Part shown: positions 1 to 52,749 of the stretch, one piece after another
How the letters are laid out: each line of letters opens with the position of its first letter
Numbering within the stretch: the stretch's first letter is position 1
Assembly: GCA_002269645.1 (NCBI GenBank)
Contig: NIVC01001804.1
Coordinates: forward strand, 42,978 to 106,977
DNA: 64,000 nt
Direction: 5' to 3'
From: Macrostomum lignano
Taxonomy: Eukaryota
Program-made: the position numbers and the translations under genes
The notes under the pieces: model-generated
The model's input: only the letters and a program-made list of their open reading frames with translations
Told to the model about the DNA's origin: nothing
The model's database searches: none

Positions 1-415
1 AGCTGACTTGGCGTGAAAGCTGGTCAACTTTCTGTGGCACAACACGATACAGGCTGTTTCTCATCCAAACAGGGTTCCTCTGCAAGTGGTCGCTCACATT
101 TGTCATGATAGTACTGAGGTCGAGCTCACGGAAGTTTTTCTCGATGAAATCGCAAACAGTCTGCACGTACAGCGAACCCGTGTTGATGCTTCTAAAGGCG
201 ACTGAGCCTGGACTGTTGGCGTAGCAGACCAGAAAGTCGCTCTCTGGGGTACAGACTGTGAGGTTGTACCTTGTTTCCTCTCGCGAATAGGAAGCAAAAG
301 TTCGATCCTGGCGGCTTCCGCGACCGGCCTGAATGAAGAACACCTTTGGCTTTCCTTCTAGGCTTCGGCAGACAGAGGTCTGTGATGCGATGGTAGTGGC
401 GGTAAAGTCTTCAGC
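1..415 (-). CDS. P1 last exon: caspase C-terminal part, KPKVFFIQAGRG plus small subunit
   Basis: My translation is AEDFTATTIASQTSVCRSLEGKPKVFFIQAGRGSRQD...SDFLVCYANSPGSVAFRSINTGSLYVQTVCDFIEKNF...PQKVDQLSRQVS, with no stop before position 1. It is collinear with 47922-48374. Confidence 0.88.
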
Positions 416-3400
416 CTTTCAATAGTGAATTCCAGTCTAGTCCAGACTTTTGCAAATGCGAGAAACCAATTCTTTTTCAGACAATATTACACTTTGTTTC
501 AATATCATACTCGTACATTTCTATACGGAGCTATTTGAATAACCCTATTATTGCATATATCTAGTAACCATAATAGAAGCTAAGCATGTATTTTTGGCTT
601 ACCTGAAACCTTTCGATCACTTTTCGAATTTCGTAGGGACACCCGTCCCTACCGTAGATGCAGTCGTGGCTGCCGTGCGCCATCAGGAAGCAGACAAAGC
701 TGCCGTGCTTGGCAAGGTCTCGTGACTTTTTAATCTCACTGAGGAAATCATCCAACTGCTCAGTAGTAAGGTCTTTTTTTATCTTGACGATGAAGCGCAG
801 CCTCTCGAATACCCGTTTCGCTTGTTCAACATCATGATCAGAACCCTTACGCTCTGTAATACTGAATGTGATGTCACTTCCGGACTCGTACCTGCTGATG
901 TTGATGATGAGGCAGTAGCCTTGCGGGTCCGTCACTGGATAGAAGTCTCCGTCGAGCCTGGAATGCAGCAGACGCTCAATATACTCGTAATTTTTTATAC
1001 TGACAACAAAAACATAAATTATGTAGTAGCACCTTGGTGGTTGATGTCGAACTATTTTGGCTCGCATAGCTCCGCTGAGGTTTCTAAAAAGTTTTTTTTC
1101 ATTGTCAAAAGGAAATTTATTTGAACTATTCAATGAGTGAATATTTGTTAGCAGTTTTCACTGGACAAATAAAGTAACATCGACTCACAAATCTGCTTCC
1201 TCCGCTTTATCATCTCTTGGTTCTTCCGAATGGTCCGTGACAATTTTTCGCCTAAAATGGTCAAAAAGCTTTGTAGTCTATTAGCTATGCTTTCAGAAGC
1301 TGTGTGTGCTGTAGCTGTGTGCTGTAGCTGTGTGTGCTGTAGCTGTGTGCTGTAGCTGTGTGTGCTGTAGCTGTGTGTGCTGTAGCTGTGTGTGCTGTAG
1401 CTGTGTGCTGTAGCTGTGTGTGCTGTAGCTGTGTGCTGTAGCTGTGTGTGCTGTAGCTGTGTGTGCTGTAGCTGTGTGTGCTGTAGCTGTGTGCTGTAGC
1501 TGTGTGTGCTGTAGCTGTGTGCTGTAGCTGTGTGTGCTGTAGCTGTGTGCTGTAGCTGTGTGTGCTGTAGCTGTGTGCTGTAGCTGTGTGTGCTGTAGCT
1601 GTGTGCTGTAGCTGTGTGTGCTGTAGCTGTGAGCTGTAGCTGTGTGTACTGTAGCTGTGTGTGCTGTAGCTGTGTGTGCTGTAGCTGTGGGTGCTGTAGC
1701 TGTGTGTGCTGTAGCTGTGTGTGCTGTGCTGTAGATGCGTGCTGTAGCTATGTGCTGTAGCTGTGTATGCTGTAGCTGTGTGTCCTGAAGGAACTCACGG
1801 CAGTGCCAGAGGCTCGTTGAAGTAAATCTTGCCTTCGTAACTAAAATTGCAGAGTGGAGTCTGAAGTCAGGGGAATAGAGGATGAGCGCCCTTGCTCCAT
1901 GCTTCACTCTATGTTTTATCGATCTTCATTCTGTTTAACTGTCGAGCTTGCAACTTTCCAATTCTTTACCGTAATAATACAGAAAAGTACTACAAAAACT
2001 GCCCCATTTTACGAGCGTAAGTTAAAACTATTTTTTCACAGCAAAATGCTTGCTGCGCTGAAGTCTCACCATAGACCGTATATTCCATGGGCCACTCACT
2101 ATTAAAACTACTCGTATGTAAAAATTAAACCACTTTAAAGCTCACTTTCAGGGAGGTTAATGACATAGATTTTATTTTCGGGATTTAATCGATCACTTTC
2201 CCGGACATATTGCAAGGATTATTGTATGTACCTAAATAAGCGAGCTTCTCTCTTCTCTTCCTTCGTGACTCGAGAAATTTCTTAATGAAATTTTGTCTAT
2301 GGTAAGAATGTGGGGGCTTCGCCTCTACACCCCCAGCAGGGGCTTCGCCCCCACACCCCAATCCCCAACTTCAACCATAGACATACAAGTACCCCGAAAA
2401 AAGCTGGAAAAATCTTTAGGCCGACCACAGTCGCTGAAAGTTTAAGTTCAGTAGCTGAGGGACATAGAAAGTATTTTTGCAATGGAGAAGAAATATAAAT
2501 TTATTTCAGTTGCACGAAGATACAGAAACTTCACAACCGCTAAAAAGACTGCCGTATATGAAAGTAAGTGAAAAAATTTGACACTTTTCTGTAAAAGCGG
2601 CAAACCTTTTAGGCAGACTTGAATATGCCTCTGCTTCTGCTTCTTGGAAACTCAGAACTTTGTGGTCCTTGACGATGAGTTTTCCGATGACAGCTTGGTT
2701 GCCGAGACAGCAGTTTAGGTCACGCAAGCGCTAATCTTTAATCAAGAACTAACAGAAGCCTTTAGTTGTTGGCACCATGATCTCACGCAGGGCCGTCTGG
2801 AGGTCATTGAACGACTTGCTTCCAGGTTTGTCTGGCGCCGCGCTATCTGCCGATTTTTCGTATAGAGCCGGCGACAGTCGCAGCAGCAAGACTTGAGCTC
2901 GTGCGGCTGGATCCCAGTTGAACAATGCGGCTCCAATCTCAAAGCCAACGATCCAAATTGGCCGTCTCCTCGAGTCTTCCAACCTCAGACATGCCCGACG
3001 TTGGACTCCACTTTGGGTGACGCTCTGGTTATCACTCGGAGTTGCTCGTGACTGGGGGCTGCTTGAAGACACTGCTCCATTGCGGCTTGCAGAAATTGTA
3101 GCCGAATTGGTCCTTGCCTGTGCAAAAGACTTTGTTGGATCCCCTGCTGTCTTGGCTGGCTCCTTGCTCATTGCGTCAGGTTAGAATCGCTGCGACGCCA
3201 ATACTACTACTGAGGCTGTGTTTATTTGAGTTGCAGCTCGCAGCCGATAAACTACGTATATTTCTGCTCAGCCGTAGGCCGTGCTCCAGAGCTTTCTATC
3301 TTAATAAATCTAAATATACTAAATCTCTAATATTTGTTTGTTTGTTTGTTTGTTTGTATGTTTGTCCATAACGCTCTAGAGATTGCAATTCTTCACCGAT

Positions 3401-6400
3401 TTTGATCGCGTTTTCGTCAAAAGATTCGAAATTGTCTAATAATAATAATTGTCTAATATGATTGTGTAAACAATCATAGAAGCGTCATGTAAACAGTCAT
3501 AGAAGCGTCATGGAAGAATAAAAGAAGCGTCATGTAAAAATCAAAAGAAGCGTCATGTCAGACATGAAAGAAGTGTAATGTAAAAATTAAATGAAGCTAT
3601 TGTGCTGTGCTGGGGAGACTTACTGAGATGTCAAGGCTCACGGAGAATAACTGAGATTACGGAGGGGGGTTTCTGAGATGTCAAAGCAAAAGTCAGAAAC
3701 TACTTCAAAGTACATGTACTTTACTCAAATTTTTTATTACATTCTTTGTTGGCTCGCCACGGGGGGGCGCTGATAGAAGAAGAGTCATGTAAAAAAGAAA
3801 AGAAGCACTATGTATACATAAAAGAAGAGTCATGTCGAAGTTAAAAGATTCATTTGGGAATTGCTACGATGTCAAGGCTTGGAGGGAATCGCTATAGTGC
3901 TGTGATTCTTGAAGAAAGAATCACTAAATTGTCAAGGCTTAGGGGAAAAGAATTGCTGAGATTTCAAGGCTTTTATAGGTTGGGTTAAAGTTAGGTTTAG
4001 GTCAGGTTTGGGTTGAGGGTTAGATTTTAGCGGGTTTCAAAGTTAACAGGGGATTTTTCAGATATCGAGGTTTATGGGGGGCATTGCTGACATTTCAAGG
4101 CTTACGGGGGAAATAGCTGAGATGTCAAGGTTCATGGGGGAATAAATGAGATGTCAAGGCTAAAGTCAGAAGCTACATGTAGTCTATTGAAAACTTTTTT
4201 TCATTATTTGTTGGCTCCTCACGGGAGGGAGGGATCGCTGATAGAAAAAGCGTAATGTAAAAAATAAGAAGCTTAATGTCGAAGTTAAGAGATTCATTTG
4301 GGAATCCCTACGATGTCGAGGCTTGCAGGGAATCGCTATAATGCTGTAGTGCTATAATGACTGTTGGAGAGAATTACTGAAATGTCAATGCTTTAGGGTT
4401 AGGGTTAGGGTTAGGGTTAGGGTTAGGGTTAGGGTAAGGTTAGGGTTGGAAGGTTGACAGATTTTTTTTAGATTTCAAGGCTTTTTGGGGGCATTGCTGA
4501 GATGTCAAGGGGGAAGTTGATATGTTAAAGCTTGTGGGGGGGGAATTACTGACATATCAAGGCTTACAAGGGACTTCTGATATATATTGCAAAAAGATTC
4601 TACATGTACTTTATTACAAAGCTTGTACTGCATTTTTGGCTCCCCGACGCTAAGATACTAAGCTAAAAAATACTACTAGCGCTTTACAAACTTATGCAGA
4701 TGTCAGGCTGTAGGGTTAGTGTTCGGGTTGGTATTAGGGTTTAGGTTTAGGGTTAGGTTCAGGGTTATTGCGTTAAGATTCGTGTTAGGGTTAGGGTTAG
4801 AGTAGCTTATAACTTAGCTCATGTAGCTTATTAAAAATGTTTATCATGGAAGCATCATGCAAAAACAATGGAAGCGTCATATAAAAATCATAGAAGCATC
4901 ATGCAACAACCCATGGACAAAATATTGAATTTAGGGTTTTGGTTAGGATTTGGGTTAGTGTTAGAAGTTTGACAGGAGATTTTTTAAGATTTCAAGACTA
5001 CATGTAGCTTATTAAAAAACGCGTATTGCATTTCTTTGGCTCCCCAACGGGGGGCGTAGATTGCTAGTTAGCTTCTAAATTATTATGAGCATAGTAAACT
5101 TCCAACTAAGAAAAATACATTAGCCTGTGTTCTGAATTTTTATGTATGGCCAAGCTACTACAAAAATGTGAAAAATGCCCACTCAGAGCAACTGCAGTCA
5201 GCTGCTCAATATTCAATCATAATTTACAGCACATATAGTTTTCATGCATACATTCTCAGACATTCTCATTCTCAGTCGCCATGAAAACTCACCCACGCAG
5301 CAGCTCAGCCAGTCTCCAGTTTCTCTTTTGTGTGGCCAAGGCTAGCGCAGTCCTATACTTATTGTTCTTCAGGCTCCAATCCGCCCCTGAGTCCAGCAGA
5401 ACCTGACTGACGTGCTGGGGCGCCCAGCAGGTGACTGCCTGTATGAGGGGTGTGTATTCACACTGATTCCTCGCATTGGCGGAGGCTCCGGCAGCCAGCA
5501 GAGCGGAAGCTGCGGCAGAATTGCCATCTTTGACTGCATGATGCAAACAACTGTCAGCAGCAGTATTCGCACAGGTGGGATCACCAAGCTCCACCAGCTG
5601 CTTCCACAGAGCCTCATCACTCCTCCAAGCTTCGTTCATCGCAATATAACCCCGTCTGTCATAAGCATCCATCTCCACCAGCTTCATCCGATCCTCAGCA
5701 TTGAGCTGAGCTACGCCCATCAACGCGGTGAGACCCAAAAAGTCAGGCAGGTCGCAGCTGTCGCGGGTCGCTGCTCGTCGCAGTCCCACCAAGTCGCGCG
5801 CGTTCACCAGCCGCTGCAGCTTCTGTCGATCCGCCTCCTCCTGCAAAGACGAACGGAAACTTTGAGCACAGCTACTCAGCTGCTGCAACATCAGCACCGC
5901 AGATTCCACTCACCTGAGCTGTCAGACCGGAGATAGTGCCATATTCATCCACAACTAGCCGCATCTCCCTGCAACAGCAAAAATGAGCAGCGATGCGAAT
6001 ATGCAATTTTCTAAAATATGACAATTCCGATTGACAAAAAATTTACTTTAATAAGGTCTAGATAATTTTTCATGATAAATTTAGTAAATGGAAATTCCTA
6101 CTTATCTGAGCTGCTTACAGATGGAGTTTCCAAGAGGACTGCAGCAGCTCTGCAACAATCAGCATTGGCGAGAGCGCATCCGACTTCTCACACGCAGCTC
6201 ATTTTCCATTTCTGCAGCATTAGTTTCCTTCCATCTCACAATGTCTCACAAAGCACTCACGCACAGCCTCCCAGTTCTCCATCTGCAGCTCAACCCACAC
6301 ACTCTCACTGCACACCGAGGCCCTACAGCTTCCATTCTTGACTGAGATCAACCGGCACCCCATTGGCTGGGAGGCAGCCAGCTTATCAAGCAGCGAACTG

Positions 6401-7245
6401 CTCACTCACCGCTTGATGTAGCTGGCCAGCTCTGAGTGGCCGCTGAGCCTCGCCAGTGCGGACGCTGTCCAATCTTCGAGATCTTTCAGTCTGAGCAGCC
6501 GCGACCTCTTCGAGTTTCTGTGCTGTCTGCATTCATTGAACCTGTCCTGCCTCAGCAGGTGCAGCAGGTGCTTGGCGCATTTCCAGCTTCCAGTCCGCGC
6601 CGCCTCCATCAGCGGAGTGGCGCCGTTGTCATTCCGCAGCCACTTCGCATCGAACGACAGCAGCGTCAGCAGCCGCAGGTGGTCCCGCCGGGCTGCCAGG
6701 TGCGCAGCCGTGTTGCCGTTCGCGTCAGCTGCCTTGGGGATTGCGCCCAGCTCAAATAAGTACAAGATGCACTTTTCAGTGTGCACGGGAGTCTCAGGAG
6801 CGTCGGCCACCAGCATGAGGACGGTCCGACGATCTGCATCAGCGCTGGTGACCAGCTGGCGCGTTGCCAGCCGCCGCACCTTGCCGAAGTCACCTTGGAT
6901 GACGAGCTTGGCGAGAGTGTGGAGATCGGCTGGTGAGTCTCCGACGCTTTCCCGGTTGCTGGGGTCCGGCTTAGTGAGTTGCTGCAACTGCAATTAAAGC
7001 ATCTCTAACCTAAGTGCAAATCTTAGCACTGAAGTATTTTAGGAGACTTGAATTTACGAGCGTATGAGCTACTGGAGTAGCTGAGAGATGACTAATTTAT
7101 TACTAATTATTAGTTACTAATTACAGATTACTAGTCAATTTCAATAACTTCAACTTACCGCTCTGTCAGAGAACATGGTTATTTTTTCGCTTTCTGACGA
7201 AGTGCTTGACGTGCTCAAAGAGCTTGAACTTGAAGAGCTGGACAT
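1..7245 (-). CDS. P1: ankyrin-ankyrin-pseudocaspase (catalytic Cys to Gly), 8 exons, last exon runs off the window start
   Basis: Manual exon chain: 7245-7159 (87 nt), 6987-6410 (578), 5968-5914 (55), 5840-5293 (548), 1840-1799 (42), 1251-1189 (63), 1083-603 (481), 415-<1. All junctions are AG/GT and the phases match (0,2,0,2,2,2,0). The frame is open throughout (756 codons inside the window). The structure is the same as P3. Confidence 0.78.
603..1083 (-). CDS. P1 exon 7: caspase large subunit (peptidase C14)
   Basis: Contains PQGYCLIINISRY, ERKGSDHDV and SFVCFLMAHG (catalytic His). Donor is CAG|GTAAGC at 603/602; acceptor is TTTTAG|A at 1084/1083. Confidence 0.88.
1293..1785 (+). repeat. 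13/15-bp minisatellite (TG)nCTGTAGC in P1 intron 5
   Basis: Tandem TGTGTGCTGTAGC / TGTGTGTGCTGTAGC units. The same repeat occupies the equivalent intron of P3. Confidence 0.95.
2506..3171 (-). mobile_element. Degenerate LTR-retrotransposon gag-like fragment inside P1 intron 4
   Basis: WIVGFEIGAALFNWDPAARAQVLLLRLSPALYEK...SFNDLQTALREIM resembles retrotransposon gag and is broken by stops. Recognised by eye only. Confidence 0.4.
3309..5067 (+). mobile_element. Non-autonomous Helitron-like element in P1 intron 4
   Basis: The 5' end is A|TCTAAATATACTAAA followed by a TTTG microsatellite. The 3' end is a hairpin (GCTCCCCAACGGGGGGC), then GATTGCTAG|T at 5064-5068. The termini match the family at 21056-35974. 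Confidence 0.65.
4393..4445 (+). repeat. Interstitial telomeric-type (TTAGGG)n tract
   Basis: Seven perfect TTAGGG units (4393-4434), then TAAGG and one more unit. Degenerate units also occur at about 3985-4030 and 4710-4800. Confidence 0.9.
5293..5840 (-). CDS. P1 exon 4: second ankyrin-repeat domain (ANK-A)
   Basis: DSCLHHAVKDGNSAAASALLAAGASANARN and YTPLIQAV motifs. Acceptor CTTTGCAG|GAG; donor GG|GTGAGT, which contains the ORF-track stop. Confidence 0.88.
6410..6987 (-). CDS. P1 exon 2: first ankyrin-repeat domain (ANK-B)
   Basis: NTAAHLAARRDH and GATPLMEAARTG motifs. 578 nt, as in all five copies in the window. Donor CG|GTGAGT. Confidence 0.88.

Positions 7246-9522: not shown

Positions 9523-9540
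<18 letters not shown>
8863..9540 (+). mobile_element. Crypton-like tyrosine recombinase fragment (DUF3504/KCTD1-ZMYM-like), truncated
   Basis: GERGQE...TKN...RIY...YELIKTYL...FFPRP...GINWLGSFM...KKYTNHCIR matches the Crypton YR pattern. The final catalytic His/Tyr segment is absent. Confidence 0.6.
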
Positions 9541-9553
<13 letters not shown>

Positions 9554-9700
9554 TGACTGACTGACTGACTGACTGACTGACTGACTGACTGACTGACTGA
9601 CTGACTGACTGACTGACTGACTGACTGACTGACTGACTGACTGACTGACTGACTGACTGACTGACTGACTGACTGACTGACTGACTGACTGACTGACTGA
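9528..9700 (+). repeat. (ACTG)n microsatellite, about 43 units
   Basis: A pure tetranucleotide run at the point where the Crypton fragment and the Mab-21 reading frame converge. Confidence 0.97.
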
Positions 9701-15054: not shown

Positions 15055-15265
15055 TTTGGTTCGTTATCGGTGCTGTGGAATGCGGAGAGCGCCGCATTTT
15101 GCTGGAATTTATCTATTATTGCTCATTTGCGTCACAATTGTCTGCCATTGGCAGCGCTGCCACCGCCAATTGAAATAAATGAGGCTTGGGTGCGGTTCTG
15201 CTTGGCTACAGAATTATAAGCTGCATAAAATGCAGTCATAAGAATAATTGCTAATCTAGCTGCTG

Positions 15266-15322: not shown

Positions 15323-15395
<73 letters not shown>

Positions 15396-19258: not shown

Positions 19259-19839
19259 TCTTTACGTTTGGTAGCAAATACTCGTTACATGCAGCTCGTG
19301 TTTCGTTTAAATGTACTCATATATACGATGTGAGCAGTCCTGCTCATCGGCTCACTTTTCCCTGTAATTTTTGTCTCCGTCTCTCGTATGCATCTCAGGC
19401 GTACTGTAGCTATTGCCAACTGCTCATCAAGGAGTGACCAAGCAGAAAGCAATCTAATTTTGTCTGGATGAGCAGTATTTCAGTGGCGACAGAACTCAAA
19501 CAAAATACTGGTTTATTATTTAAAAGCTTTTGATTAACTACTTTAGTTTAGAAGAATTAGTCACAGGGTTATAAACTTTACACGGAAACGAAAAATATCA
19601 TAAAAATAAAATGAAACGATAATTGAGTACTTGAAGGTTAAGCAGATTGACTTGAGTAGACATCAGAGTCAAATAACCATTAGTCATATTCAGAAGGTAA
19701 CACGATCGGTGTTTGAACAGCAGAAAAGTGTCCACATTTATCAATCAAGCTGCCAATACGAGTATATCAAATATTCCATCATTAAAGACAGCTCCGTGAC
19801 ATCGCCGCTACCTGAAGAAACTCACAGCGGCTTCAAAGG

Positions 19840-39222: not shown

Positions 39223-40015
39223 CGCTCGATGTAGCTGGCCAGCTCTGAGTGGCCGCTGAGCCTCGCCAGGTCCAACGCCGTCCGACCCTCGCGATCCTGC
39301 AGTCCGAGCAGCCGCGACCTCTTCGAGTTTCCGTGATTCAAGCATTCATTGAATTTAAACTGCCTAAGCAGGTGCAGCAGGTGCTTGGCGCATTTCCAGC
39401 GTCCAGTCCGCGCCGCCTCCATCAGCGGAGTGGCGCCGTTGTCGTTCCGCAGCCACTTCGCATCGAAAGACAGCAGCGTCAGCAGACGCAGGTGGTCCTG
39501 CCGGGCTGCTAGGTGCGCAGCCGTGTCGCCGTTCGCGTCAGCCGCCTTGGGGTTCGCGGCCAGCTTAAATAAGTACAAGATGCACTTTTCAGTGTGCACG
39601 GGAGTCTCAGGAGCGTCGGCCACCAGCATGAGGACGGTCCGACGATCTGCATCAGCGCTGGTGACCAGCTGGCGCGTTGCCAGCCGCCGCACCTGTCCGA
39701 AGTCACCTCGGATGACGTCGTGGGCGAGAGTATGGAGATCGGCTGGTGAGTCTCCGACGCTTGCCCGGTTGCTGGGGTCCGGCTGAGTGAGTTCCTGCAA
39801 CTGCAATTAAGCACTAAAGCTGCACATTGAAACATGTGAGTGAGAACCAAAGATATTTTTCAAATGGATTGCTTTAACTCACAAAAAAATAATATTTCAA
39901 ACAAAAGAATGCTACAAAACTTACATTCTTACAAAGAATCACCCTATGTACAATATAAGGTAAAACTTACCTTGTAATCAGAATAGTATATCACCTTAGA
40001 GGCCGCACTGCCCAT
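39223..40015 (-). CDS. P2 exon 1 (40015-39971) and exon 2 (39800-39223), copy 2
   Basis: Same exon sequences and splice sites as copy 1. Confidence 0.7.
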
Positions 40016-42014
40016 TTTTAAAGACTCGAGCAGTTAATCAACTGGAAAATCAAAATGCATGAGCAGCTGCGTCAACTCAAACTCAACAGATTATATAGCG
40101 GCCTCAGAAGACATTGTCAGAGAGATGCACTGCCTGCGCCTCATTGGCTGAATGCAAACCCAGTGTCTCTGTTTCTGATTCTCTGCCGTACAGAATGCAT
40201 ACTACTCACGGCAGTAGAAGTTAGATTGTAGATATTATTTTCACTTTCGCATAATACTTTTTTCTGAATTTCTCTGTTGTAATACATGGCATACAATGAT
40301 AAAACAACAACAACAAAATACGTGCTCCGCGTCACAGTGCGCGCCTCAAAGGTAGGTCTCGAATGAACGCCCCGCCGCCGACCGAATCTGGGGCGCCGGC
40401 GTCAGCCAGCAGGCAGTCGACGAATCGCCGAGTGCGGGCTTGCCCCCCCCCCCACCGGTAGGGTGCCTGCAGCGTCAATAGCAGCACCTCCTGCATCGGT
40501 TGTGGGAAGTACGTTCGGCTCTGATGATGTGGAATGCAAGCTGGAGTCGCCGACGGCGCAACAGGTCGCTTGGACGAACCAGGCCGTCATGGTGATAGAA
40601 AGCTGCGTTGGTCACTCGCTCGTTGCCGATCCTGAAGGCAGCGCTTAGCAGGTCAGCGTGCGCCGCGTCAACTTGTTGCTTGAGCAACTCCATCAGCGTC
40701 CAGGTCTCGGCGTTGTACAACAGGACGGTCTCGATCACCGCCTGGAAAAACGCCAGGCGGTTTGCAGCGAGGTTGTCTCGAACCTGGGACCTTACGCCTA
40801 GCCTAAACCTAGTGCCTACAGTGCGGCTACTCCGCCTATTGATGGAAAGGCGAGAAAATCAGCCATAAACCTTCGGCACTGCAGTCAAATACATAGCAGT
40901 GATGGGCTGCTCAGTGCGCAGGCAGAGCCAATGCACAGTTGAGTGAAATCTATAAATAGCAATTGTCTATGCAGTCCGCCAGTCAGCCAGGGTCAGAATG
41001 TACACACGCAGCCAGAATGTACACATGCTGCACTGAGCATTTTTCTCTCCCTTGCACACTGCAGCCAGTATTGAAACTTACACAGTGGAGAGAGAAAATT
41101 TATGGCGCAATGTCAATTGGAGTTTCAATTCAAGTTAAATAGAGTTTTCCTATCAGTTGGCACTGGCGCAATCATTAAAATTGGCTGTGAAGTTTTTTCA
41201 CTGCGCGCAGGCTGATACAATTTGCATTAAAAAAGCCTATTTAAAACAGTTTTTCAAATCCAATTAGCATCCCTTTAGCATTAAAGCAGATATAAGAAAT
41301 TTTAACTGTCTTTTTTTCCAGACAATTTTAAATCTTTTGGCGAAAACGCGATCAAAATTGGTCAAGAATTGCACTCTCTAAAGCGTTACAGACAGACAAA
41401 CAGACAAACAGACAAACAGACAAACAGACAAACAGACAAACAGACAAACAGACAAACAGACAAACAGACAAACAGACAAACAGACAAACAGACAAACAGA
41501 CAAACAGACAAACAGAAAACAGACAAACAGACAAACAGATCTTAGCGATTTAGTATAGGTGGAATGGATGGATGGATGGAGGATGGATGGATTTCTAATT
41601 ATCTGAGCTGCTCGCAGATGGAGTTTCTAAGAAAATCAGAAAAAATCAGCATTGGCGAGAGCGCATCCGATTTCTCACACGCAGCTCATTTTCCATTTTT
41701 GCAGCATGATTTTCCTTCCACCTCACAATGTCTATCAAGGCACTCACGCACAGCCTCCCAGTTCTCCATCTGCAGCTCAACCCACACACTCTCACTGCAC
41801 ACCGAGGCCCTACAGCTTCCATTCTCGACTGAGATCAACCGGCACCCCATTGGCTAAGAGGCAGCCAGCCAATCACAGCTCTCGCCCATCAAGCAGTCAG
41901 TCAGAGACAAGCTCAGCTGACTGGCTCTGATTGGCTGGCCTGAGACTGCAGCACTGGCCACCGCAGCAGAATGCTGCAAAACTTGATGGACACAGCAGCG
42001 AACTGCTCACTTAC

Positions 42015-42807
42015 CGCTCGATGTAGCTGGCCAGCTCTGAGTGGCCGCTGAGCCTCGCCAGGTCCAACGCCGTCCGACCCTCGCGATCCTGCAGTCCGAG
42101 CAGCCGCGACCTCTTCGAGTTTCCGTGATTCAAGCATTCATTGAATTTAAACTGCCTAAGCAGGTGCAGCAGGTGCTTGGCGCATTTCCAGCGTCCAGTC
42201 CGCGCCGCCTCCATCAGCGGAGTGGCGCCGTTGTCGTTCCGCAGCCACTTCGCATCGAAAGACAGCAGCGTCAGCAGACGCAGGTGGTCCTGCCGGGCTG
42301 CTAGGTGCGCAGCCGTGTCGCCGTTCGCGTCAGCCGCCTTGGGGTTCGCGGCCAGCTTAAATAAGTACAAGATGCACTTTTCAGTGTGCACGGGAGTCTC
42401 AGGAGCGTCGGCCACCAGCATGAGGACGGTCCGACGATCTGCATCAGCGCTGGTGACCAGCTGGCGCGTTGCCAGCCGCCGCACCTGTCCGAAGTCACCT
42501 CGGATGACGTCGTGGGCGAGAGTATGGAGATCGGCTGGTGAGTCTCCGACGCTTGCCCGGTTGCTGGGGTCCGGCTGAGTGAGTTCCTGCAACTGCAATT
42601 AAGCACTAAAGCTGCACATTGAAACATGTGAGTGAGAACCAAAGATATTTTTCAAATGGATTGCTTTAACTCACAAAAAAATAATATTTCAAACAAAAGA
42701 ATGCTACAAAACTTACATTCTTACAAAGAATCACCCTATGTACAATATAAGGTAAAACTTACCTTGTAATCAGAATAGTATATCACCTTAGAGGCCGCAC
42801 TGCCCAT
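42015..42807 (-). CDS. P2 exon 1 (42807-42763) and exon 2 (42592-42015), copy 3
   Basis: Same exon sequences and splice sites as copy 1. Confidence 0.7.
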
Positions 42808-43089
42808 TTTTAAAGACTCGAGCAGTTAATCAACTGGAAAATCAAAATGCATGAGCAGCTGCGTCAACTCAAACTCAACAGATTATATAGCGGCCTCAGA
42901 AGACATTGTCAGAGAGATGCACTGCCTGCGCCTCATTGGCTGAATGCAAACCCAGTGTCTCTGTTTCTGATTCTCTGCCGTACAGAATGCATACTACTCA
43001 CGGCAGTAGAAGTTAGATTGTAGATATTATTTTCACTTTCGCATAATACTTTTTTCTGAATTTCTCTGTTGTAATACATGGCATACAAT

Positions 43090-43850
43090 GATAAAACAAC
43101 AACAACAAAATACGTGCTCCGCGTCACAGTGCGCGCCTCAAAGGTAGGTCTCGAATGAACGCCCCGCCGCCGACCGAATCTGGGGCGCCGGCGTCAGCCA
43201 GCAGGCAGTCGACGAATCGCCGAGTGCGGGCTTGCCCCCCCCCCACCGGTAGGGTGCCTGCAGCGTCAATAGCAGCACCTCCTGCATCGGTTGTGGGAAG
43301 TACGTTCGGCTCTGATGATGTGGAATGCAAGCTGGAGTCGCCGACGGCGCAACAGGTCGCTTGGACGAACCAGGCCGTCATGGTGATAGAAAGCTGCGTT
43401 GGTCACTCGCTCGTTGCCGATCCTGAAGGCAGCGCTTAGCAGGTCAGCGTGCGCCGCGTCAACTTGTTGCTTGAGCAACTCCATCAGCGTCCAGGTCTCG
43501 GCGTTGTACAACAGGACGGTCTCGATCACCGCCTGGAAAAACGCCACCCTCTGGCGGTCAGGTAGGCCCTTGGATTGCAAGACTGCCCTCACAGAATAAA
43601 AGGCAGCCCATGACGTCAAGAACTAGACCGCCGAGGAAGTCGAACTGCTGACAACACGAAAGCTCCGTCGCCGGGCCATCTGCGCCTTGACTCATAAATG
43701 CAACCTCGATGTCGTCCGGCACGCAGGGCACAACGGTTTTCTGTGTATTGACCACCAGACCGACAGCTTGTACAGTTGTTTCTGGGCGCCCTCGACCGTT
43801 CAGGACAGCAGGACGAGATCGTCAGCGTAGCCAAGCACGCTGAGCCGCCT
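43090..43850 (-). mobile_element. Degenerate RTE 3' fragment (shorter copies at 37510-37967 and about 40305-40759)
   Basis: VIETVLLYNAETWTL...VDAAHADLL and SVLGYADDL-like sequence homologous to 21304-22100; (TTG)n tail; frameshifted. Confidence 0.85.
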
Positions 43851-47921: not shown

Positions 47922-48374
47922 CTAAACTTTCCGAGCTCTTTCTGGATCGAAGCTAACAAGTCGTGAAAGCTGGTCGACCTTCTGCGGCGTAAGATGAAAT
48001 AGGCCGTCTTCCATCCGAACTTTCGTTTGCTGCAAGTGGCCGCTTACCACAGTCATGATGGTATTTAGGTCGAGCTCACGAAAGTTTTCCTCGATGAAAT
48101 CGCAAACAGTCTGCACGTACACCGAACCCGTGTCGGGGCTTCTAAAGGCGGCTGAGCCTGGAATATTGGCATAGCAAACCAAAACGTCGCCCTTTTCGGG
48201 AAGAACTGCAGTGTTGCACACTGGAGCGGGTGCCTCATCCGTTTCTACACGAGAATTGGGCAGAACAACTTGGTCGCGATGGCTTCCGCGACAGGCCTGG
48301 ATGAAGAACACCTTTGGCTTTCCTTCGAGGCTGCGGCAGACAGACGTCTGTGAAGTGGTGGTGAAGTCTTGGGC
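47922..48374 (-). CDS. P3 last exon: QACRG, VETD linker, small subunit
   Basis: AQDFTTTSQTSVCRSLEGKPKVFFIQACRG...SRVETDEAP...GDVLVCYA...FRSPDTGSVYVQTVC. Confidence 0.92.
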   Translation of the reverse strand, partial: AQDFTTTSQTSVCRSLEGKPKVFFIQACRGSHRDQVVLPNSRVETDEAPAPVCNTAVLPEKGDVLVCYANIPGSAAFRSPDTGSVYVQTVCDFIEENFRELDLNTIMTVVSGHLQQTKVRMEDGLFHLTPQKVDQLSRLVSFDPERARKV

Positions 48375-51300
48375 CTTTGAAACAATAAGTATGCAGTGTA
48401 CACTAGACTTTTCTAAATGCGAAAAACAAGTTCATTCTACGTGACCTACGCGCACTCGTTACCTTGGCCGTTAATTTAAACTTTCGCTTCAAATGACCCT
48501 TCTATTGATTCAATATTATGCATTTCTATTTGGGAGAATTTTAATATTACAATTTTTGTTTATGTCTTGATAAAAATATAAAAGATGATATTCTTGGCAA
48601 TACGCTCGTAGTTGGGCTTACCTGGAACCTATCAGTCAGATATTGAATGTGGTAGGGCAACCCGTCCCTACCGTAGATGCAGTCTTGGCTGCCGTGCGCC
48701 ATCATGAAGCAGACAAAGCTGCCGTGCTTGGCAAGGTCAGGTGATTTCTTTATCTCACTGAGGAAATCATCTATCTCCGCAGCAGTGAGGTTCTCTTTTA
48801 TCCAGACGATGAAGCGCAGACTCTCGAATACCTGTTTTACTCGTTCAACATCGCGAACCGAACCTTGACGCTCTTTGTGACTGAATGTGATGTGACTTCC
48901 GGAGTCGTACCTGCTGATGTTGATGATCAGGCAGTAGCCTTGCGGGTCCGTAACTGGATAGAAATTTCCTTTGAGCCTGGAATGCAGCAGATGCTCAATA
49001 TCTCGTATACATGTACTTTCTATTGTATCAAGGCCAAACAATACAATGTAGTGGCACCTTGAGCGTTGAGGTTGGACTGGTCTGCCACGCACAGCTTCTG
49101 TAGGATTTCTAAAAGATTTTCATATTGACATAGGAATAAATTCAATATAGGCTGGTATATTGAATATTTGTAAGCACTTCCCCAAGACCACGAGAAAAAT
49201 ATCTTTAACTTTGACTCACCGATCGGGTTCATCATCGCTTGGTTCCTCGCCAGGGGCATGGTCCGTGAAAACGTTTCGTCTGAAATGGCCAAAAAGGGTA
49301 AGCAGTTCTCTCAGCTGTGTGCTGTAGCTGTGTGCTGTAGCTGTGTGTGCTGTAGCTGTGTGTGTGTGTGTGTGTGTGCTGTAGCTGTGTGTGCTGTAGC
49401 TGTGTGCTGTAGCTGTGTGCTGTAGCTGTGTGCTGTAGCTGTGTGTGCTGTAGCTGTGTGTGCTGTAGCTGTGTGCTGTAGATGTATGCTGTAGCTGTGT
49501 GTGCTGTAGCTGTGTGTGCTGTGGCTGTGTGTGCTGTGGCTGTGTGTGCTGTGGCTGTGTGTGCTGTAGCTGTGTGTGCTGTGGCTGTGTGTGCTGTGGC
49601 TATGTGTGCTGAGGCTGTGTACTGAGGGAACTCACGGCAGTGCCAGAGGCTTGTCGAAGTAAATCTTGCCGTCGTACCTAAAAGGCAGTGCGGTTTCTGA
49701 AGTCAGGGAAAGTTGCGTGAGCCGATGCTCTTTGTTAAAATCTATCTGTTTTATCGATTGTCATTCTGTTGAATTTGTGGTTATCGTGCAGCAGCCGTAA
49801 ATTACGAGCTTTATACTCAACAGCATTGAAAAAGTCGCCACTCTGCACCAGTGAACAATTTCTCTTAAACTATTCTGAAATCAAAAAAATACGAGAAAAC
49901 TGAGGGCTAGCTTTAATTCGTCCTCGCACCGTCCGATTCCCCCCACTTCATTCCTCAACCCAAGTATGTGGCGTGGCGTAGCCAAAGTTGCATTACTAGC
50001 AAGACTGAGAGACTTCATCTGCACACTCGAAGGTGGCGACCATAGACGGAATCTTTCAGATGCTGCTGAGTATATATTGTTACTATGGTTTACCATAATA
50101 CTTGTATGTCTATGGTTGAAGTTGGGATGGGGGTGTGGGGGCGAAGCCCCCACATTCTTACCATAGAAAAAAATTTCATTAAGAAATTTCTCGAGTCACG
50201 AAGGAAGAGAAGAGAGAAGCTCGCTTATTTAGATACATATAATAATCCTTGCAATATGTCCGGGAAAGTGATCGATTAAATCCCGCAAAATAAAATCTAT
50301 GTCAATAACCTCCCTGAAAGTGAGCTTTAAATTGGTTTAATGACATTAACTGCCCGCTAATTTGCATTAAAGCAAGTTTGACTCCTGCAAGCGGGCTTAA
50401 ACGTAGTCTATGGGATTAAAAAGCAAGAATAAGTGCCCAGCGGGCACAAAGGTCATGGTACAATGCAAATTAGCGGGCAATTATGTCATTAACTGCCCGC
50501 TAATTTTGTCCCACTTTGTCAAGGACACAAATGTCTATGTTTATGGCACAATAATAGTAATACCCATGCTTTGCGGGCGTTAATGAGAAATCCTCCTAAC
50601 GCCGCCCTCTGATTTTCCCATTACGCTCGTAACGCCCTTCAAGCATGGGTATTAATGTACTATCACTCCTTGTCTTTGAGTTATTTTAATAATTGAATCA
50701 TTTACTGTTTGTCAATGATAGATCAAAGTCAGAGAGACATTCTCAGTCGCCATGGAAACTCACCCACGCAGCAGCTCAGCCAGTTCCTTCCTACCCTCCT
50801 TTTTGGCCAAATCCAGCGCAGTCCTGCCGCGCCCGTCCTTCAGGCTCCAATCCACCCCCGAGTCCAGCAGAACCCGACCGACTGCGGCGGCGGTGGCGGG
50901 GGGCGCATGGATGGCTGCCCACGAGAGGGCCGTGGATTCCCACTGATTCCTGGCATTGGCGGAGGCTCCGGCAGCCAGCAGAGCGGAGGCTGCGGCAGAA
51001 TTGCCAGCCCTGGCTGCATGGTGCAGACAACTGCAAGCCCATATATTCGCACAGGTGGGGTCACCCAGCTGCACCAGCTGCTTCCACAGAGCCTCATCAC
51101 GGCACGAGCTGTTCCGAGCTGCGTACATCAGTGCGGTGAAACCCCAGTTGTCAGGCAGGTCGCAGCGGCCGCGGGTCACCGCTCGCCGTAGCCTCGCCGA
51201 GTCGCCCGCTTCGGCCAGCCGCTGCAGTTCCTTTCGATCCGCCTCCTCCTGCAAAAGCAAGCGGGAAATTTGAGCACAGCTGCTCAGCTGCAGCCGCATC

Positions 51301-52749
51301 GGCACCGCAGATGCCGCTCACCTGGGCTGTCAGGCCGGAGATATAGCCATTTTTTCCCACAACCAGCCGCATCTCCCTGCAACAGTAAAAAAGTGAGCGG
51401 CAAATTTGCAATTTTCCTAAATCTGACAACTGGCCGCCAAAATTAAAATTTATTATTTACCATAGAAGTTTTATGGTAAATTTTAGAAAATATAAACTGG
51501 CAATTAGGCGGTTAAGGCCCCTTCGGGGGACCTGTACCTCCTTGTATGCCCCAGAGTATTTGTGAGACATTTGTGAAAAAGCATCCCCCAGATGGCAAGT
51601 ATATCCCAAAAACAAGCACCCGGATCCCCGATATAAATGCAACATAGTTTTGAAGCTAAAAATGGAATAAAGAATTTAAATAAACTACATGTAGCTTCTG
51701 AGCTTTAAGTCTTGACATCTCAGCAATTCCCCATGAGCCTTGACATCTCAGCAATTCCATTATGAGCCTTGTCATCTCAGCAATTCCATTATGAGCCTTG
51801 ACATCTTTGCAATTGGCCTTGACATCTCATCAATTCCCCCCAAGGTTCGCTTTTAAATGTGTCACACAGACACTCACTCTTGGTATATATTGGATTCCTA
51901 ATTATCTAATTAGCTGCTCACAGATGGACTTTTCAAAAGAACTGCAGCAGCGAACTGCTCACTCACCGCTCGATGTAGCTGGCCAGCTCTGAGTGGCCGC
52001 TGAGCCTCGCCAGGTCCGACGCCGTCCGACCCTCGCGATTTTTCAGTCCGAGCAGCCGCGACCTCTTCGAGTTTCCGTGCTGTCTGCACTCATTGAACAT
52101 TGCCTGCCTGAGCAGGTGCAGCAGGTGCTTGGCGCATTTCCAGCTTCCAGTCCGCGCCGCCTCCATCAGCGGAGTGGCGCCGTTGTCGTTCCGCAGCCAC
52201 TTCGCATCGAACGACAGCAGCGTCAGCAGCCGCAGGTGGTCCCGCCGGGCTGCCAGGTGCGCAGCCGTGTCACCGTTCGCGTCAGCCGCCTTGGAGTTCG
52301 CGCCCAGCTTAAATAAGTACAAGATGCACTTTTCAGTGTGCACGGGAGTCTCAGGAGCGTCGGCCACCAGCATGAGGACGGTCCGACGAGCTGCATCAGC
52401 TCTGGTGACCAGCTGGCGCGTTGCCAGCCGCCGCACCTGTCCGAAGTCACCTCGGATGGCGTCGTGGGCGAGAGTCTGGAGATCGGCTGGTGAGTCTCCG
52501 ACGCTTTCCCGGTTGCTGGGGTCCGGCTGAGTGAGTTTCTGCAACTGCAATTGAGACACCTGGGAGTTACATCAAAGTACTGAAATTTTTTGAGTCAACT
52601 TGCACAAGCAACCGGAGTCGCCGACTGTAGATAATTACTACTACATGTATTCAGTTTCTGTCGCTTCAACTTACCGCAGAGTTAGGGAAGTCGGTAATTA
52701 TTTCTTCGTCTTCTGACGATGAATCAGAATCGTCTGAGGAGCTTGACAT
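47922..52749 (-). CDS. P3: ankyrin-ankyrin-caspase, 8 exons, 744 aa, catalytic His/Cys intact
   Basis: Exons: 52749-52675 (75 nt), 52544-51967 (578; alternative acceptor 52559), 51376-51322 (55), 51248-50764 (485), 49677-49636 (42), 49279-49220 (60), 49108-48622 (487), 48374-47922 (453). Total 2235 nt = 745 codons, all AG/GT with matching phases. Contains MAHG and QACRG. Confidence 0.82.
48622..49108 (-). CDS. P3 exon 7: caspase large subunit
   Basis: PQGYCLIINISRY, ERQGSVRDV, SFVCFMMAHG; donor CAG|GTAAGC. Confidence 0.9.
49314..49622 (+). repeat. (TG)nCTGTAGC minisatellite in P3 intron 5
   Basis: Same unit as 1293-1785 in a shorter array. Confidence 0.93.
50764..51248 (-). CDS. P3 exon 4: ANK-A domain
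   Basis: CSCLHHAARAGNSAAASALLAAGASANARN; donor GG|GTGAGT. Confidence 0.87.
51967..52544 (-). CDS. P3 exon 2: ANK-B domain
   Basis: 578 nt; DTAAHLAARRDH, GATPLMEAARTG; donor CG|GTGAGT. Confidence 0.87.

What the first reader, a model, noticed from the sequence alone, without database searches (positions are those of the whole stretch)
1..52749. Active, dead and truncated paralog trio: a caspase-8/cFLIP-like regulatory set built on ankyrin prodomains
Seen: three same-strand paralogs share the exon 2-5 structure but differ at the output end. P3 has QACRG and VETD. P1 has QAGRG and no linker Asp. P2 stops in exon 5, lacks caspase exons and has an MGSAASK N-terminus. Established: caspase-8 is tuned by the catalytically dead cFLIP-L and the prodomain-only cFLIP-S, and caspase-1 by CARD-only proteins. 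Inference: this locus evolved the same enzyme, pseudoenzyme and prodomain-only logic independently, with the conserved ANK-B domain as a candidate homotypic interface.
Basis: partly seen in the sequence, partly recalled or inferred. Interest (0 to 1): 0.9.

Follow-up and report, generated by a model that had tools for sequence, protein, structure and literature searches.

The report
Flatworm ankyrin-caspase paralog cluster
Three neighbouring flatworm genes share an ankyrin-repeat front end: one carries an intact caspase, one a caspase that has lost its catalytic cysteine, and one no caspase. They belong to a large, fast-diversifying family with a hypervariable ankyrin binding surface, so a cFLIP-like decoy role is plausible for the dead copy but unproven.

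Summary
The window comes from Macrostomum lignano. All three paralogs lie on the minus strand. P3 (52749-47922) is an intact 9-exon, 708-aa ANK-caspase with QACRG and VETD. P1 (7245-1, 3' end off the window) has the same nine exons. It has Cys->Gly (TGT->GGT) and Arg in place of the family-conserved linker Asp. Both changes are unique among 14 aligned family caspases and recur in a second haplotype, whose identical gene model is RNA-seq derived. Its caspase domain shows purifying selection (omega 0.27-0.47).

P2 has only exons 1-4. Exons 1-2 (MGSAASK start) occur in three identical copies of a 2.8-kb tandem repeat, 15-21 kb of LINE and satellite DNA away from exons 3-4. There is no exon 5 and no caspase exon, and no transcript evidence.

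The trio is a slice of a Macrostomum-specific family of at least 40 clusters: the ANK module joined to a caspase, a STE-like kinase, or nothing. ANK-B is a homogenised constant region. ANK-C is hypervariable at the canonical ankyrin target-binding positions (18 of 20 differ between paralogs).

A cFLIP-like role is plausible for P1, weak for P2, and untested for both. ANK-prodomain caspases are already published.

The parts
47922..52749 (-). P3: intact ANK-prodomain caspase gene, 9 exons, 708 aa. Exons: 52749-52675, 52544-51967 (ANK-B), 51376-51322, 51248-50764 (ANK-C), 49677-49636, 49279-49220, 49108-49058, 48976-48622, 48347-47922 (includes stop).
   Evidence: All introns are GT-AG and the ORF is uninterrupted. 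Pfam Ank_2 and Peptidase_C14. AlphaFold2 mean pLDDT 83: ANK solenoid residues 40-405, disordered linker 412-451, caspase fold 452-708. Foldseek TM 0.8-0.89 to caspase-3/7/8/9.
48285..48299 (-). P3 active-site pentapeptide QACRG (Cys codon TGT). Catalytic His lies in AHGS at 48688-48699.
   Evidence: aligned to the caspase-7 active site.
48237..48248 (-). P3 VETD in the intersubunit loop (residues 601-604). The Asp sits at the family-conserved position and is the likely autoprocessing site.
   Evidence: Lies within the AlphaFold2 low-confidence loop 591-619.
1..7245 (-). P1: ANK-prodomain pseudo-caspase, same 9-exon plan. Exons: 7245-7159, 6987-6410 (ANK-B), 5968-5914, 5840-5293 (ANK-C), 1840-1799, 1251-1189, 1083-1033, 957-603, 379-1. 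The last 12 codons and the stop are outside the window.
   Evidence: The same exon structure on allelic contig NIVC01003438.1 translates exactly to the annotated 731-aa protein P0001. That annotation is RNA-seq transcript-based.
317..331 (-). P1 QAGRG: catalytic Cys replaced by Gly (GGT against TGT in P3). His (AHGS, 669-680) is retained.
   Evidence: The same codon is present in the second haplotype. Unique among the aligned family caspases.
269..283 (-). P1 REETR: the family-conserved linker Asp is replaced by Arg, and the following segment is 6 residues shorter than in P3.
   Evidence: column conserved in at least 90% of the other family caspases.
36430..37222 (-). P2 exon 1 (37222-37178, MGSAASKVIYYSDYK, N-myristoylation-type start) and exon 2 (37007-36430, ANK-B), copy a. 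Identical copies: b at 40015-39971 / 39800-39223, c at 42807-42763 / 42592-42015.
   Evidence: 0 differences over 793 nt among the three copies. The first codons and about 170 nt upstream are homologous to those of the transcribed paralog P0002.
35151..43546 (.). Tandem triplication of a 2.8-kb unit (98.8-99.4% identity). Each unit carries a LINE 3' fragment, P2 exons 1-2 and a microsatellite. The allelic contig has a single copy.
20343..20968 (-). P2 exon 3 (20968-20914) and exon 4 (20840-20346, ANK-C), followed by TGA (20345-20343) from read-through of the GG|GTGAGT donor. No exon 5 and no caspase exons lie downstream.
21307..23730 (-). 808-codon LINE reverse-transcriptase ORF inside the 15.5-kb P2 'intron 2', flanked by satellites (23.4-33 kb).
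   Evidence: Pfam RVT_1, E=6e-29; tandem repeats.
50764..51161 (-). P3 ANK-C repeats R5-R8, the hypervariable recognition surface. Equivalents: P1 5753-5293 and P2 20753-20346.
   Evidence: 18 of 20 canonical binding positions differ between P3 and P2 and between P3 and P1, against 15-27% of other positions. Surface dN 1.04 against framework dS 0.145. Family entropy 2.45 against 0.55 bits.

Best explanation
The window holds a segment of a Macrostomum lignano-specific, rapidly evolving tandem gene family with a modular protein plan:
- a variable first exon (acidic Ser-rich, or an MGS myristoylation-type start);
- a constant ankyrin block (ANK-B);
- a hypervariable ankyrin block (ANK-C), whose variation sits on the canonical target-binding face;
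- a disordered acidic linker;
- an output domain, either a caspase (here) or a STE/MAP3K-like kinase (at other loci).

P3 is the catalytically competent member. Inferred mechanism: ANK-C binds its target, possibly with clustering through the constant ANK-B. This brings caspase domains together. They dimerise and cut the VETD loop, and probably the DEPD site in the prodomain linker, giving an active protease.

P1 is a maintained pseudo-caspase. It keeps the fold, His, the S1 pocket and the C-terminal strand, but lacks the nucleophile and the processing Asp, and it has its own ANK-C specificity. It most likely acts as a non-catalytic partner or scaffold that can pair with active family caspases. 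That role is cFLIP-L-like in kind, but it is triggered by a different input.

P2 is an effector-less copy produced by birth-and-death turnover (deletion of the 3' half, LINE and satellite invasion, 5' triplication). I put about 35% on it being expressed as a myristoylated ANK-only protein and about 65% on it being a gene remnant.

Shown: the gene structures, the substitutions, the selection signatures and the family architecture. Inferred: target binding, dimerisation, regulation, and any link to cell death or immunity.
For: Gene models and motifs.

P1:
- Cys->Gly and linker Asp->Arg are unique among the 14 aligned family caspases, with 7 deviations in 76 conserved columns against 4 for P3.
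- Both changes are present in two haplotypes.
- Caspase-domain omega is 0.27 between haplotypes (P=0.027) and 0.47 against P3 (P=0.00025).
- The GenBank model of the allele is RNA-seq derived.

Family:
- 42 M. lignano clusters carry the ANK module with a caspase, a kinase or no output domain.
- The kinase is closest to MAP3K5 and other STE kinases, and it joins directly after exon 5.

Constant and variable regions:
- ANK-B dS is 0.04-0.12, even against ANK-kinase genes on other contigs (96% nucleotide identity); ANK-C and the caspase are more diverged.
- Surface positions 2, 3, 5, 13, 14 are invariant in ANK-B but have entropy 2.45 against 0.55 bits in ANK-C (P=2e-12).
- P3 against P2: 18 of 20 surface positions differ against 21 of 142 others (P=2.5e-11). 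Surface dN is 1.04 against framework dS 0.145 (P=1.3e-8).

Structure.

Turnover:
- The P3-position gene on the other contig carries a premature stop in exon 8, and its exon 9 mixes P1-like and P3-like residues.
- P2's triplication is haplotype-specific.
Against: - No expression data could be examined for this window's P1, P2 or P3. The exact P3 and P2 proteins are absent from the protein collection.
- The transcript support for P1 comes from a 99.6%-identical allele, and RNA-seq reads can multi-map.
- The between-haplotype test rests on only 12 substitutions.
- NG86 pairwise estimates are confounded by gene conversion. Surface codons also show raised synonymous change, so micro-conversion from diverged donors, rather than point-wise positive selection, could create the hypervariability.
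- No ligand, dimer or protease activity has been shown.
- Omega across the ANK module is about 0.8-1.9 family-wide, partly because some compared copies are pseudogenes.
Confidence: 0.55

Rival explanations
1. One reading: P1 and P2 are dedicated regulators of P3. P1 is a cFLIP-L-like pseudoenzyme and P2 a cFLIP-S/COP-like prodomain-only decoy. Both are recruited with P3 through a homotypic ANK-B interface and tune its activation.
For: - The enzyme / Cys-less / effector-less anatomy is real.
- P1 is under purifying selection and is transcribed in the allele.
- ANK-B's canonical surface is invariant in the close family and nearly identical in P2 and P3 (2 of 20 differences).
- P2 keeps open exons, intact splice sites and a promoter-proximal region shared with a transcribed paralog.
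- P2's ANK-C framework is conserved while its surface is diversified, which is not the pattern of random decay.
[quoted passage not shown] The nearest long-prodomain relatives outside Macrostomum that I checked are DED caspases.
Against: - P2's exons 2 and 3 are separated by 15-21 kb of LINE and satellite DNA. Its 5' exons vary in copy number between haplotypes, and no gene is called there in the transcript-based annotation.
- ANK-C surfaces differ at 18 of 20 positions, so a decoy could not compete for P3's ligand through ANK-C.
- ANK-B similarity extends to synonymous sites and to unlinked kinase genes.
- P1's ANK-B surface differs from P3's at 4 of 20 positions, two of them in repeat R4 (RER->LEW).
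- The family has dozens of members, so there is no reason to pair P1 and P2 specifically with P3.
- The two ANK-only models examined elsewhere are a frameshifted and a chimaeric ANK-kinase model.
Confidence: 0.2
2. Plain birth-and-death debris: both P1 and P2 are non-functional by-products of a turbulent tandem array. P1 is a young pseudogene that has not yet accumulated disabling mutations, and P2 is a truncated remnant.
For: - The array is highly unstable. The other contig has a nonsense-bearing gene at P3's position, and there are haplotype-specific duplications, LINE insertions and frameshifted relatives.
- P1 and P2 each deviate at 7-8 of 135 strongly conserved ANK columns against 2 for P3.
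- Whole-exon omega is 0.7-1.1 in the ANK module.
Against: - P1's ORF and all 16 splice sites are intact at dS about 0.39 from P3.
- There is a deficit of nonsynonymous change in its caspase domain.
- P1 is no further from outgroup family caspases than P3 is.
- The P1 allele has a transcript-based gene model.
- For P2, substitutions are concentrated on the binding surface and the framework is conserved. That signal could, however, pre-date its truncation.
Confidence: 0.15
3. The P2 5' triplication, or the whole P2 arrangement, is an assembly artefact of a repeat-rich region, and P2 is really a single ordinary gene.
For: The allelic contig has one copy of the unit. The three copies are 100% identical over exons 1-2.
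Against: The units differ by 0.6-1.2% elsewhere, which does not look like a simple collapse or expansion error. The single-copy allele also has exons 1-2 followed by the same downstream sequence leading into repeats. Exon 5 and caspase exons are absent either way.
Confidence: 0.1

Closest known systems
Caspase-8 / caspase-10 / cFLIP (CFLAR) tandem cluster of vertebrates (general knowledge)
   Same: Neighbouring paralogs share a prodomain. One paralog keeps the caspase fold but lacks the catalytic Cys. A short form lacks the protease domain. P3's VETD resembles the IETD/VETD-type processing sites of caspase-3 and caspase-8.
   Different: The prodomain is an ankyrin solenoid, not tandem DEDs. 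P1 keeps the catalytic His and the S1 residues, whereas cFLIP-L has lost more. cFLIP-S is a splice form of one gene, whereas P2 is a separate, structurally disrupted locus. The paralogs carry different ANK-C surfaces. No FADD-like platform is known. Heterodimerisation is untested.
Caspase-1 locus CARD-only proteins (COP/CARD16, INCA/CARD17, ICEBERG/CARD18) and caspase-12 (general knowledge)
   Same: Prodomain-only genes arise by tandem duplication and truncation next to the parent caspase, which is how P2 looks.
   Different: Those genes are compact and expressed. P2 is split by 15-21 kb of repeats, has triplicated 5' exons and no transcript evidence.
Platyhelminth ANK caspases (PMC11463336, Genome Biol Evol 2024, which cites Lee et al. 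2014 for Schistosoma)
   Same: An ankyrin prodomain lies N-terminal to a caspase domain. They are reported as the sister group of DED caspases. That paper also notes an M. lignano caspase with a kinase-like prodomain next to the ANK clade.
   Different: They are reported as restricted to parasitic flatworms. The M. lignano ANK-caspase family, its pseudo-caspase member and the hypervariable ANK-C are not described there. Homology of the prodomains was not tested here.
Hypervariable repeat-based recognition modules: designed ankyrin repeat proteins (DARPins) and hypervariable ANK/TPR/WD repeats of fungal NLR-like proteins (general knowledge)
   Same: Variation is concentrated at ankyrin positions 2, 3, 5, 13 and 14 on a conserved framework. 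Members form a multigene family with signalling or death-type output domains.
   Different: This is an animal germline family. The outputs are a caspase or a STE-like kinase joined directly, with no NACHT/NB-ARC domain. A constant ANK-B block precedes the variable block.
CARD shared by RIPK2 and caspases-1/2/9 (general knowledge)
   Same: One prodomain type is joined to either a kinase or a caspase, which suggests a common recruitment logic.
   Different: Here the shared module is ankyrin and the kinase is STE/MAP3K-like, not RIP-like.

Membership tests
Active caspase (peptidase C14A) | Caspase alpha/beta fold | tested here: met
   Pfam Peptidase_C14 on both exons of P3 and on the last exon of P1 (E about 1e-19). 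AlphaFold2 model and Foldseek TM 0.8-0.89 to caspase-3/7/8/9 for P3.
Active caspase (peptidase C14A) | Catalytic dyad: His (xHG) and Cys (QACxG) | tested here: met
   P3 has AHGS and QACRG, aligned to the caspase-7 dyad. P1 does not meet this: His is present but Cys is Gly.
Active caspase (peptidase C14A) | S1 pocket Arg / Gln / Arg for Asp specificity | tested here: met
   In P3, ERQGS, QACRG and AFRS align with caspase-7 VRNGT, QACRG and WRS. P1 keeps ERKGS, QAGRG and AFRS.
Active caspase (peptidase C14A) | Proteolytic activity | not testable with these tools
   Needs recombinant protein and a fluorogenic substrate assay.
cFLIP-L-like pseudo-caspase regulator (P1) | Caspase-like domain without the catalytic Cys, otherwise intact and under constraint | tested here: met
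   QAGRG in two haplotypes. The ORF is open in the window and complete (731 aa) in the allele. Omega 0.27 (P=0.027) and 0.47 (P=0.00025).
cFLIP-L-like pseudo-caspase regulator (P1) | Same recruitment prodomain as the enzyme it regulates | tested here: inconclusive
   ANK-B is 87% identical to P3's, with 4 of 20 surface differences. ANK-C differs at 18 of 20 surface positions.
cFLIP-L-like pseudo-caspase regulator (P1) | Expressed | tested here: inconclusive
   The allelic gene model P0001 comes from an RNA-seq-based annotation. Reads were not examined and multi-mapping is possible.
cFLIP-L-like pseudo-caspase regulator (P1) | Heterodimerises with, and modulates, the active caspase | not testable with these tools
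   No multimer prediction or experiment was available.
Prodomain-only decoy (cFLIP-S / COP-like) (P2) | Open prodomain ORF ending before the protease domain | tested here: met
   A 391-aa ORF results if exon 2 splices to exon 3 across 15-21 kb. The stop comes from donor read-through.
Prodomain-only decoy (cFLIP-S / COP-like) (P2) | Expressed as a stable mRNA and protein | tested here: inconclusive
   No gene is called at P2 exons 1-2 on the allelic contig, but that annotation dropped repeat-overlapping transcripts. The exact protein is not in the collection.
Prodomain-only decoy (cFLIP-S / COP-like) (P2) | Binds the enzyme's prodomain or its platform | not testable with these tools
   Requires an interaction assay.
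Published platyhelminth ANK-caspase clade | Ankyrin prodomain N-terminal to the caspase domain | tested here: met
Published platyhelminth ANK-caspase clade | Monophyly with the ANK caspases of parasitic flatworms | not tested
   No parasitic-flatworm ANK caspase was identified among the few top hits I inspected (10 scanned with Pfam, 10 looked up by name). A crude ankyrin-motif regex over all 150 found none but also missed a known ANK caspase, so it is uninformative. No phylogeny was built.
Published platyhelminth ANK-caspase clade | Affinity to DED caspases | tested here: inconclusive
   Seven of the ten long hits scanned with Pfam are DED caspases, and the one looked up by name is a mammalian caspase-10. 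PDB sequence ranking favours caspase-7 and caspase-3.
Hypervariable repeat recognition family | Variation concentrated on the canonical binding face over a conserved framework | tested here: met
   Entropy 2.45 against 0.55 bits in ANK-C (P=2e-12). 18 of 20 against 21 of 142 differences (P=2.5e-11).
Hypervariable repeat recognition family | dN greater than dS at surface codons | tested here: met
   P3-P2 surface dN 1.04 against framework dS 0.145 (P=1.3e-8). Caveat: these are pairwise NG86 estimates, and gene conversion was not modelled.
Hypervariable repeat recognition family | Distinct ligands bound by distinct members | not testable with these tools
   Needs binding experiments.

The most novel reading that the evidence does not exclude
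Macrostomum lignano encodes a germline repertoire of natural 'DARPin-like' receptors. A constant ankyrin block (ANK-B) is joined to a hypervariable ankyrin paratope (ANK-C), and this is wired directly to a caspase or a MAP3K-like kinase. The result would be a previously unrecognised intracellular recognition system for innate immunity or self/non-self discrimination. In it, Cys-less members (P1) and effector-less members (P2) act as built-in modulators or decoys, having evolved cFLIP/COP-type logic independently on an ankyrin scaffold.
Probability: 0.25. Interest if true: 0.85.

Novelty: new variant of a known kind. Interest (0 to 1): 0.6.

Why it matters
Caspase regulation by catalytically dead and prodomain-only paralogs is known mainly from vertebrate death-fold caspases. 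A maintained pseudo-caspase on an ankyrin scaffold in a free-living flatworm would be an independent origin of that logic. M. lignano has RNAi and transgenesis, so it could be tested there.

The shared ankyrin prodomain has a constant half and a half whose canonical binding face is hypervariable across dozens of genes, and it is joined to either a caspase or a kinase. That suggests a diversified recognition-to-effector family not described in the literature I could search. It also bears on the published claim that ANK caspases are confined to parasitic flatworms.

Tried and rejected
- Searched for a degenerate exon 5 or caspase remnants downstream of P2 exon 4, using a regex for YxGKxYF and a low-stringency tblastn. 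None was found.
- Considered that P2 exons might splice into the downstream ANK + Mab-21-like gene (15063-9529). Rejected: that gene belongs to a separate M. lignano family with its own start, and no annotated protein combines the ANK-B/C module with Mab-21.
- First read omega of about 1.1 for P2 ANK-C as neutral decay. Revised after partitioning the codons: the surface is hypervariable and the framework conserved.
- First took the many 'ANK-only' database proteins as support for expressed decoys. The two loci I inspected showed one chimaeric 40-kb model and one frameshifted ANK-kinase.
- Asked whether the fused kinase is RIP-like, which would give a caspase-8/RIPK analogy. It is closest to MAP3K5 and other STE kinases.
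- Looked up the exact P3 and P2 proteins in the collection. Both are absent.
- A PDB sequence search with the Mab-21-like region found nothing.
- The supplements of the ANK-caspase paper are not held, so I could not see which M. lignano sequences it used.
- A crude ANK regex on the 150 representative caspase hits was uninformative.

Full report
**Origin and layout.** The closest database proteins are all from the flatworm Macrostomum lignano. The window is collinear with GenBank contig NIVC01003438.1 of assembly Mlig_3_7, at 94-99.6% identity over long stretches but with structural differences. That contig is therefore a second haplotype or a recently duplicated copy of the locus. Everything relevant lies on the minus strand. 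Self-comparison shows three sets of homologous exons:
- ANK-B exon: P3 51967-52544; P1 6410-6987; P2 in three copies.
- ANK-C exon: P3 50764-51248; P2 20346-20840; P1 5293-5840.
- Caspase exons: only in P3 and P1.

**Gene models.** I used related proteins as guides and required GT-AG introns.
- P3 is a 9-exon, 708-aa uninterrupted ORF from the ATG at 52749 to the stop at 47922.
- P1 has the same nine exons, from 7245 to the window edge. The same structure transferred to the allelic contig translates exactly to the annotated 731-aa protein P0001. GenBank models of that assembly derive solely from a genome-guided RNA-seq transcriptome (PMC5730564). This is indirect evidence that P1 is transcribed and spliced as modelled.
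- P2 can be read as a 391-aa ORF: exon 1 (MGSAASKVIYYSDYK), ANK-B, a 55-nt exon 3 and ANK-C. The stop codon is created by reading through the exon-4 donor GG|GTGAGT.
- No exon 5 (YxGKxYF) and no caspase exon exists for P2.

**Structure of P3.** Pfam finds ankyrin repeats and Peptidase_C14. AlphaFold2 on a family alignment gives mean pLDDT 83. The model has a confident ankyrin solenoid (about residues 40-405), a disordered acidic linker (412-451) and a caspase fold. The intersubunit loop is disordered (591-619) and contains VETD at residues 601-604. Foldseek matches caspase-3, -7, -8 and -9 with TM 0.8-0.89. The sequence aligns to caspase-7 through the catalytic His, QACRG and the S1 Arg/Gln/Arg residues.

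**P1 as a pseudo-caspase.**
- P1 differs from P3 at the nucleophile by a single base (TGT to GGT). The same codon is present in the second haplotype.
- In an alignment of 14 family caspase domains, the Cys and a linker Asp (E-T/Q-D, the VETD position) are conserved in at least 90% of the others. P1 alone has Gly and Arg there, and its loop is 6 residues shorter than P3's. P1 still has two other Asp in the loop, so 'no linker Asp' is only partly accurate.
- His, the S1 residues and the conserved C-terminal strand are retained.
- Nei-Gojobori estimates for the caspase domain give omega 0.47 against P3 (P=0.00025). Between the two P1 haplotypes there are 6 synonymous and 6 nonsynonymous changes, omega 0.27 (one-sided P=0.027).
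- P1 is no further from outgroup family caspases than P3 is.
- Together this favours a maintained non-catalytic protein over a decaying pseudogene.

**P2 is ambiguous.** Points against function:
- Exons 1-2 sit in a 2.8-kb unit repeated three times (35151-43546). The three copies are identical over 793 nt. The allelic contig has only one copy.
- The nearest copy is 15.5 kb from exon 3, across a LINE reverse-transcriptase ORF (21307-23730) and satellites. Intron 2 is 441-590 nt in P1 and P3.
- Everything 3' of exon 4 is missing.
- No gene is called at P2's exons 1-2 on the allelic contig, although that annotation discarded repeat-overlapping transcripts.

Points for function:
- All four exons are open and their splice sites are intact.
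- The start codon region and about 170 nt upstream are homologous to those of the transcribed paralog P0002.
- MGSAASK fits the N-myristoylation consensus (general knowledge).
- Its ANK-C shows the selective pattern described below.

**Family context.** The 42 best hits are all M. lignano proteins that share this ANK module. About 10 clusters carry a caspase, about 16 a protein kinase, and about 16 no output domain.
- The kinase joins directly after the exon-5 peptide (YDGKIYF.EPLALP) and is closest to MAP3K5 and other STE kinases.
- The 'ANK-only' entries are not reliable evidence for decoys. Of the two I inspected, P0003 is a 40-kb model spanning several tandem ANK-kinase genes, and P0012 is an ANK-kinase read through a frameshift.
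- The gene at P3's position on the other contig (P0002) starts with MGSAAS, like P2. It keeps QACRG and EETD, has a premature stop in exon 8, and its last exon mixes P1-like and P3-like residues.
- The array is therefore unstable and recombining.

**Constant and variable ankyrin blocks.**
- Synonymous divergence in the ANK-B exon is 0.06-0.12 among P1, P2 and P3, against 0.36-0.39 in P1-P3 ANK-C, linker and caspase (P=3.6e-6). It is only 0.04-0.06 against ANK-kinase genes on other contigs, at 96% nucleotide identity. ANK-B similarity is therefore largely homogenisation or recency.
- I registered the eight repeats on the canonical ankyrin positions. Across 24 close family members, the target-binding positions 2, 3, 5, 13 and 14 are invariant in ANK-B (ANDRR / DNART / RERLS). 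In ANK-C they are hypervariable: entropy 2.45 against 0.55 bits for other positions, P=2e-12.
- Between P3 and P2, 18 of 20 ANK-C surface positions differ against 21 of 142 others (P=2.5e-11). Between P3 and P1 the figures are 18 of 20 against 38 of 139.
- For P3-P2, surface dN is 1.04 against framework dS 0.145 (P=1.3e-8), while framework omega is 0.66.
- The whole-exon omega of about 1.1 is thus a mixture of constraint and diversification, not neutrality.
- Caveat: surface codons also show raised synonymous change, so micro-conversion from diverged donors is an alternative source of the variability.

**Interpretation.** The trio is best seen as three members of a recognition-to-effector repertoire that differ in specificity. 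They share a constant ANK-B and differ in output: active caspase, dead caspase, none. A cFLIP-L-like role for P1 is plausible through caspase-domain pairing and perhaps a shared ANK-B partner. However, P1 and P2 cannot be simple competitors for P3's ligand through ANK-C. P2 may be a remnant.

**What is already known.** ANK-prodomain caspases are published for parasitic flatworms and placed as sister to DED caspases. The same paper notes an M. lignano caspase with a kinase-like prodomain (PMC11463336). An exhaustive HMMER search found no closer relatives outside M. lignano. Among long-prodomain hits, DED caspases predominate. I found no description of the M. lignano ANK family, its pseudo-caspase or its hypervariable surface in the searchable literature.

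**Limits.**
- No RNA-seq reads, multimer prediction, codon site models or experiments were available.
- The substitution counts between haplotypes are small.
- The P1 3' end lies outside the window.

Noticed in passing
window 9529-15063 (minus strand): A separate gene lies between P1 and P2. It has a 686-codon ankyrin ORF built from about 17 tandem 99-bp (33-aa) repeats (13085-14786), followed by exons with a nucleotidyltransferase-like GSYSEGWG...DIDV motif (11722-12150) and a Mab-21 C-terminal domain (10278-10907). This is a cGAS/cGLR-like architecture. It belongs to another M. lignano-expanded family (21 clusters, some with ANK).
   Followed up: partly
L002 4946-9734 (contig NIVC01003438.1), positional counterpart of window 47922-52749: The gene at P3's position on the other contig (P0002) has a P2-like MGSAAS first exon and upstream region, a premature stop in caspase exon 8 (VKVK*), and a last exon mixing P1-like and P3-like residues. 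Its exons are only 81-90% identical to P3, while the flanking DNA is 94-98.6% identical. Either the haplotypes carry different paralogs or the gene body has been converted.
   Followed up: partly
window 51967-52544 compared with L003 11788-12366, L003 48009-48590 and L004 about 10150-10730: P3's ANK-B exon is more similar to the ANK-B exons of ANK-kinase genes on other contigs (96% to L003, 93.6% to L004) than to that of its neighbour P1 (93.7%). This points to family-wide homogenisation or cassette exchange between kinase and caspase genes.
   Followed up: partly
window 1298-1787 and 49316-49620: The same (AGCTGTGTGTGCTGT)n microsatellite sits in the intron after exon 5 of both P1 and P3, and in the L002 gene. 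It has been conserved in position since the duplication.
   Followed up: no
window 15565-19268: A 1.79-kb unit is duplicated in tandem at 99.8% identity. Each copy starts with a 32-bp satellite. A 34-bp satellite follows at 19881-20190. This fills the space where P2's 3' exons would be.
   Followed up: no
window 54362-59438 (minus strand): The upstream neighbour of P3 is a UTP6-like gene (U3_assoc_6 domain, E=2e-15). Its introns hold long 22-23-bp satellites (55843-56904, 57379-59048).
   Followed up: partly
window 61691-64000 (plus strand): Long ORFs end in a gag-type aspartyl protease (DTG motif, Pfam gag-asp_proteas E=1.5e-5). This is probably the 5' part of an LTR retrotransposon running off the window.
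   Followed up: partly
protein P0129 (UniProt A0A1I8J1V4, older ML2 assembly): A P3-like gene model joins exon 2 directly to exon 5, an in-frame skip of 540 nt that removes ANK-C. It also carries translated 5'-UTR nearly identical (one residue differs) to window 52750-52860. This is either a prediction artefact or an ANK-C-less isoform.
   Followed up: no
proteins P0133 and P0277 (BOX15_Mlig000293g2, BOX15_Mlig021837g1): M. lignano also has caspases of this lineage (42% identical) joined to a Ras/Roc GTPase domain. Prodomain swapping on this caspase is therefore not limited to ankyrin.
   Followed up: no
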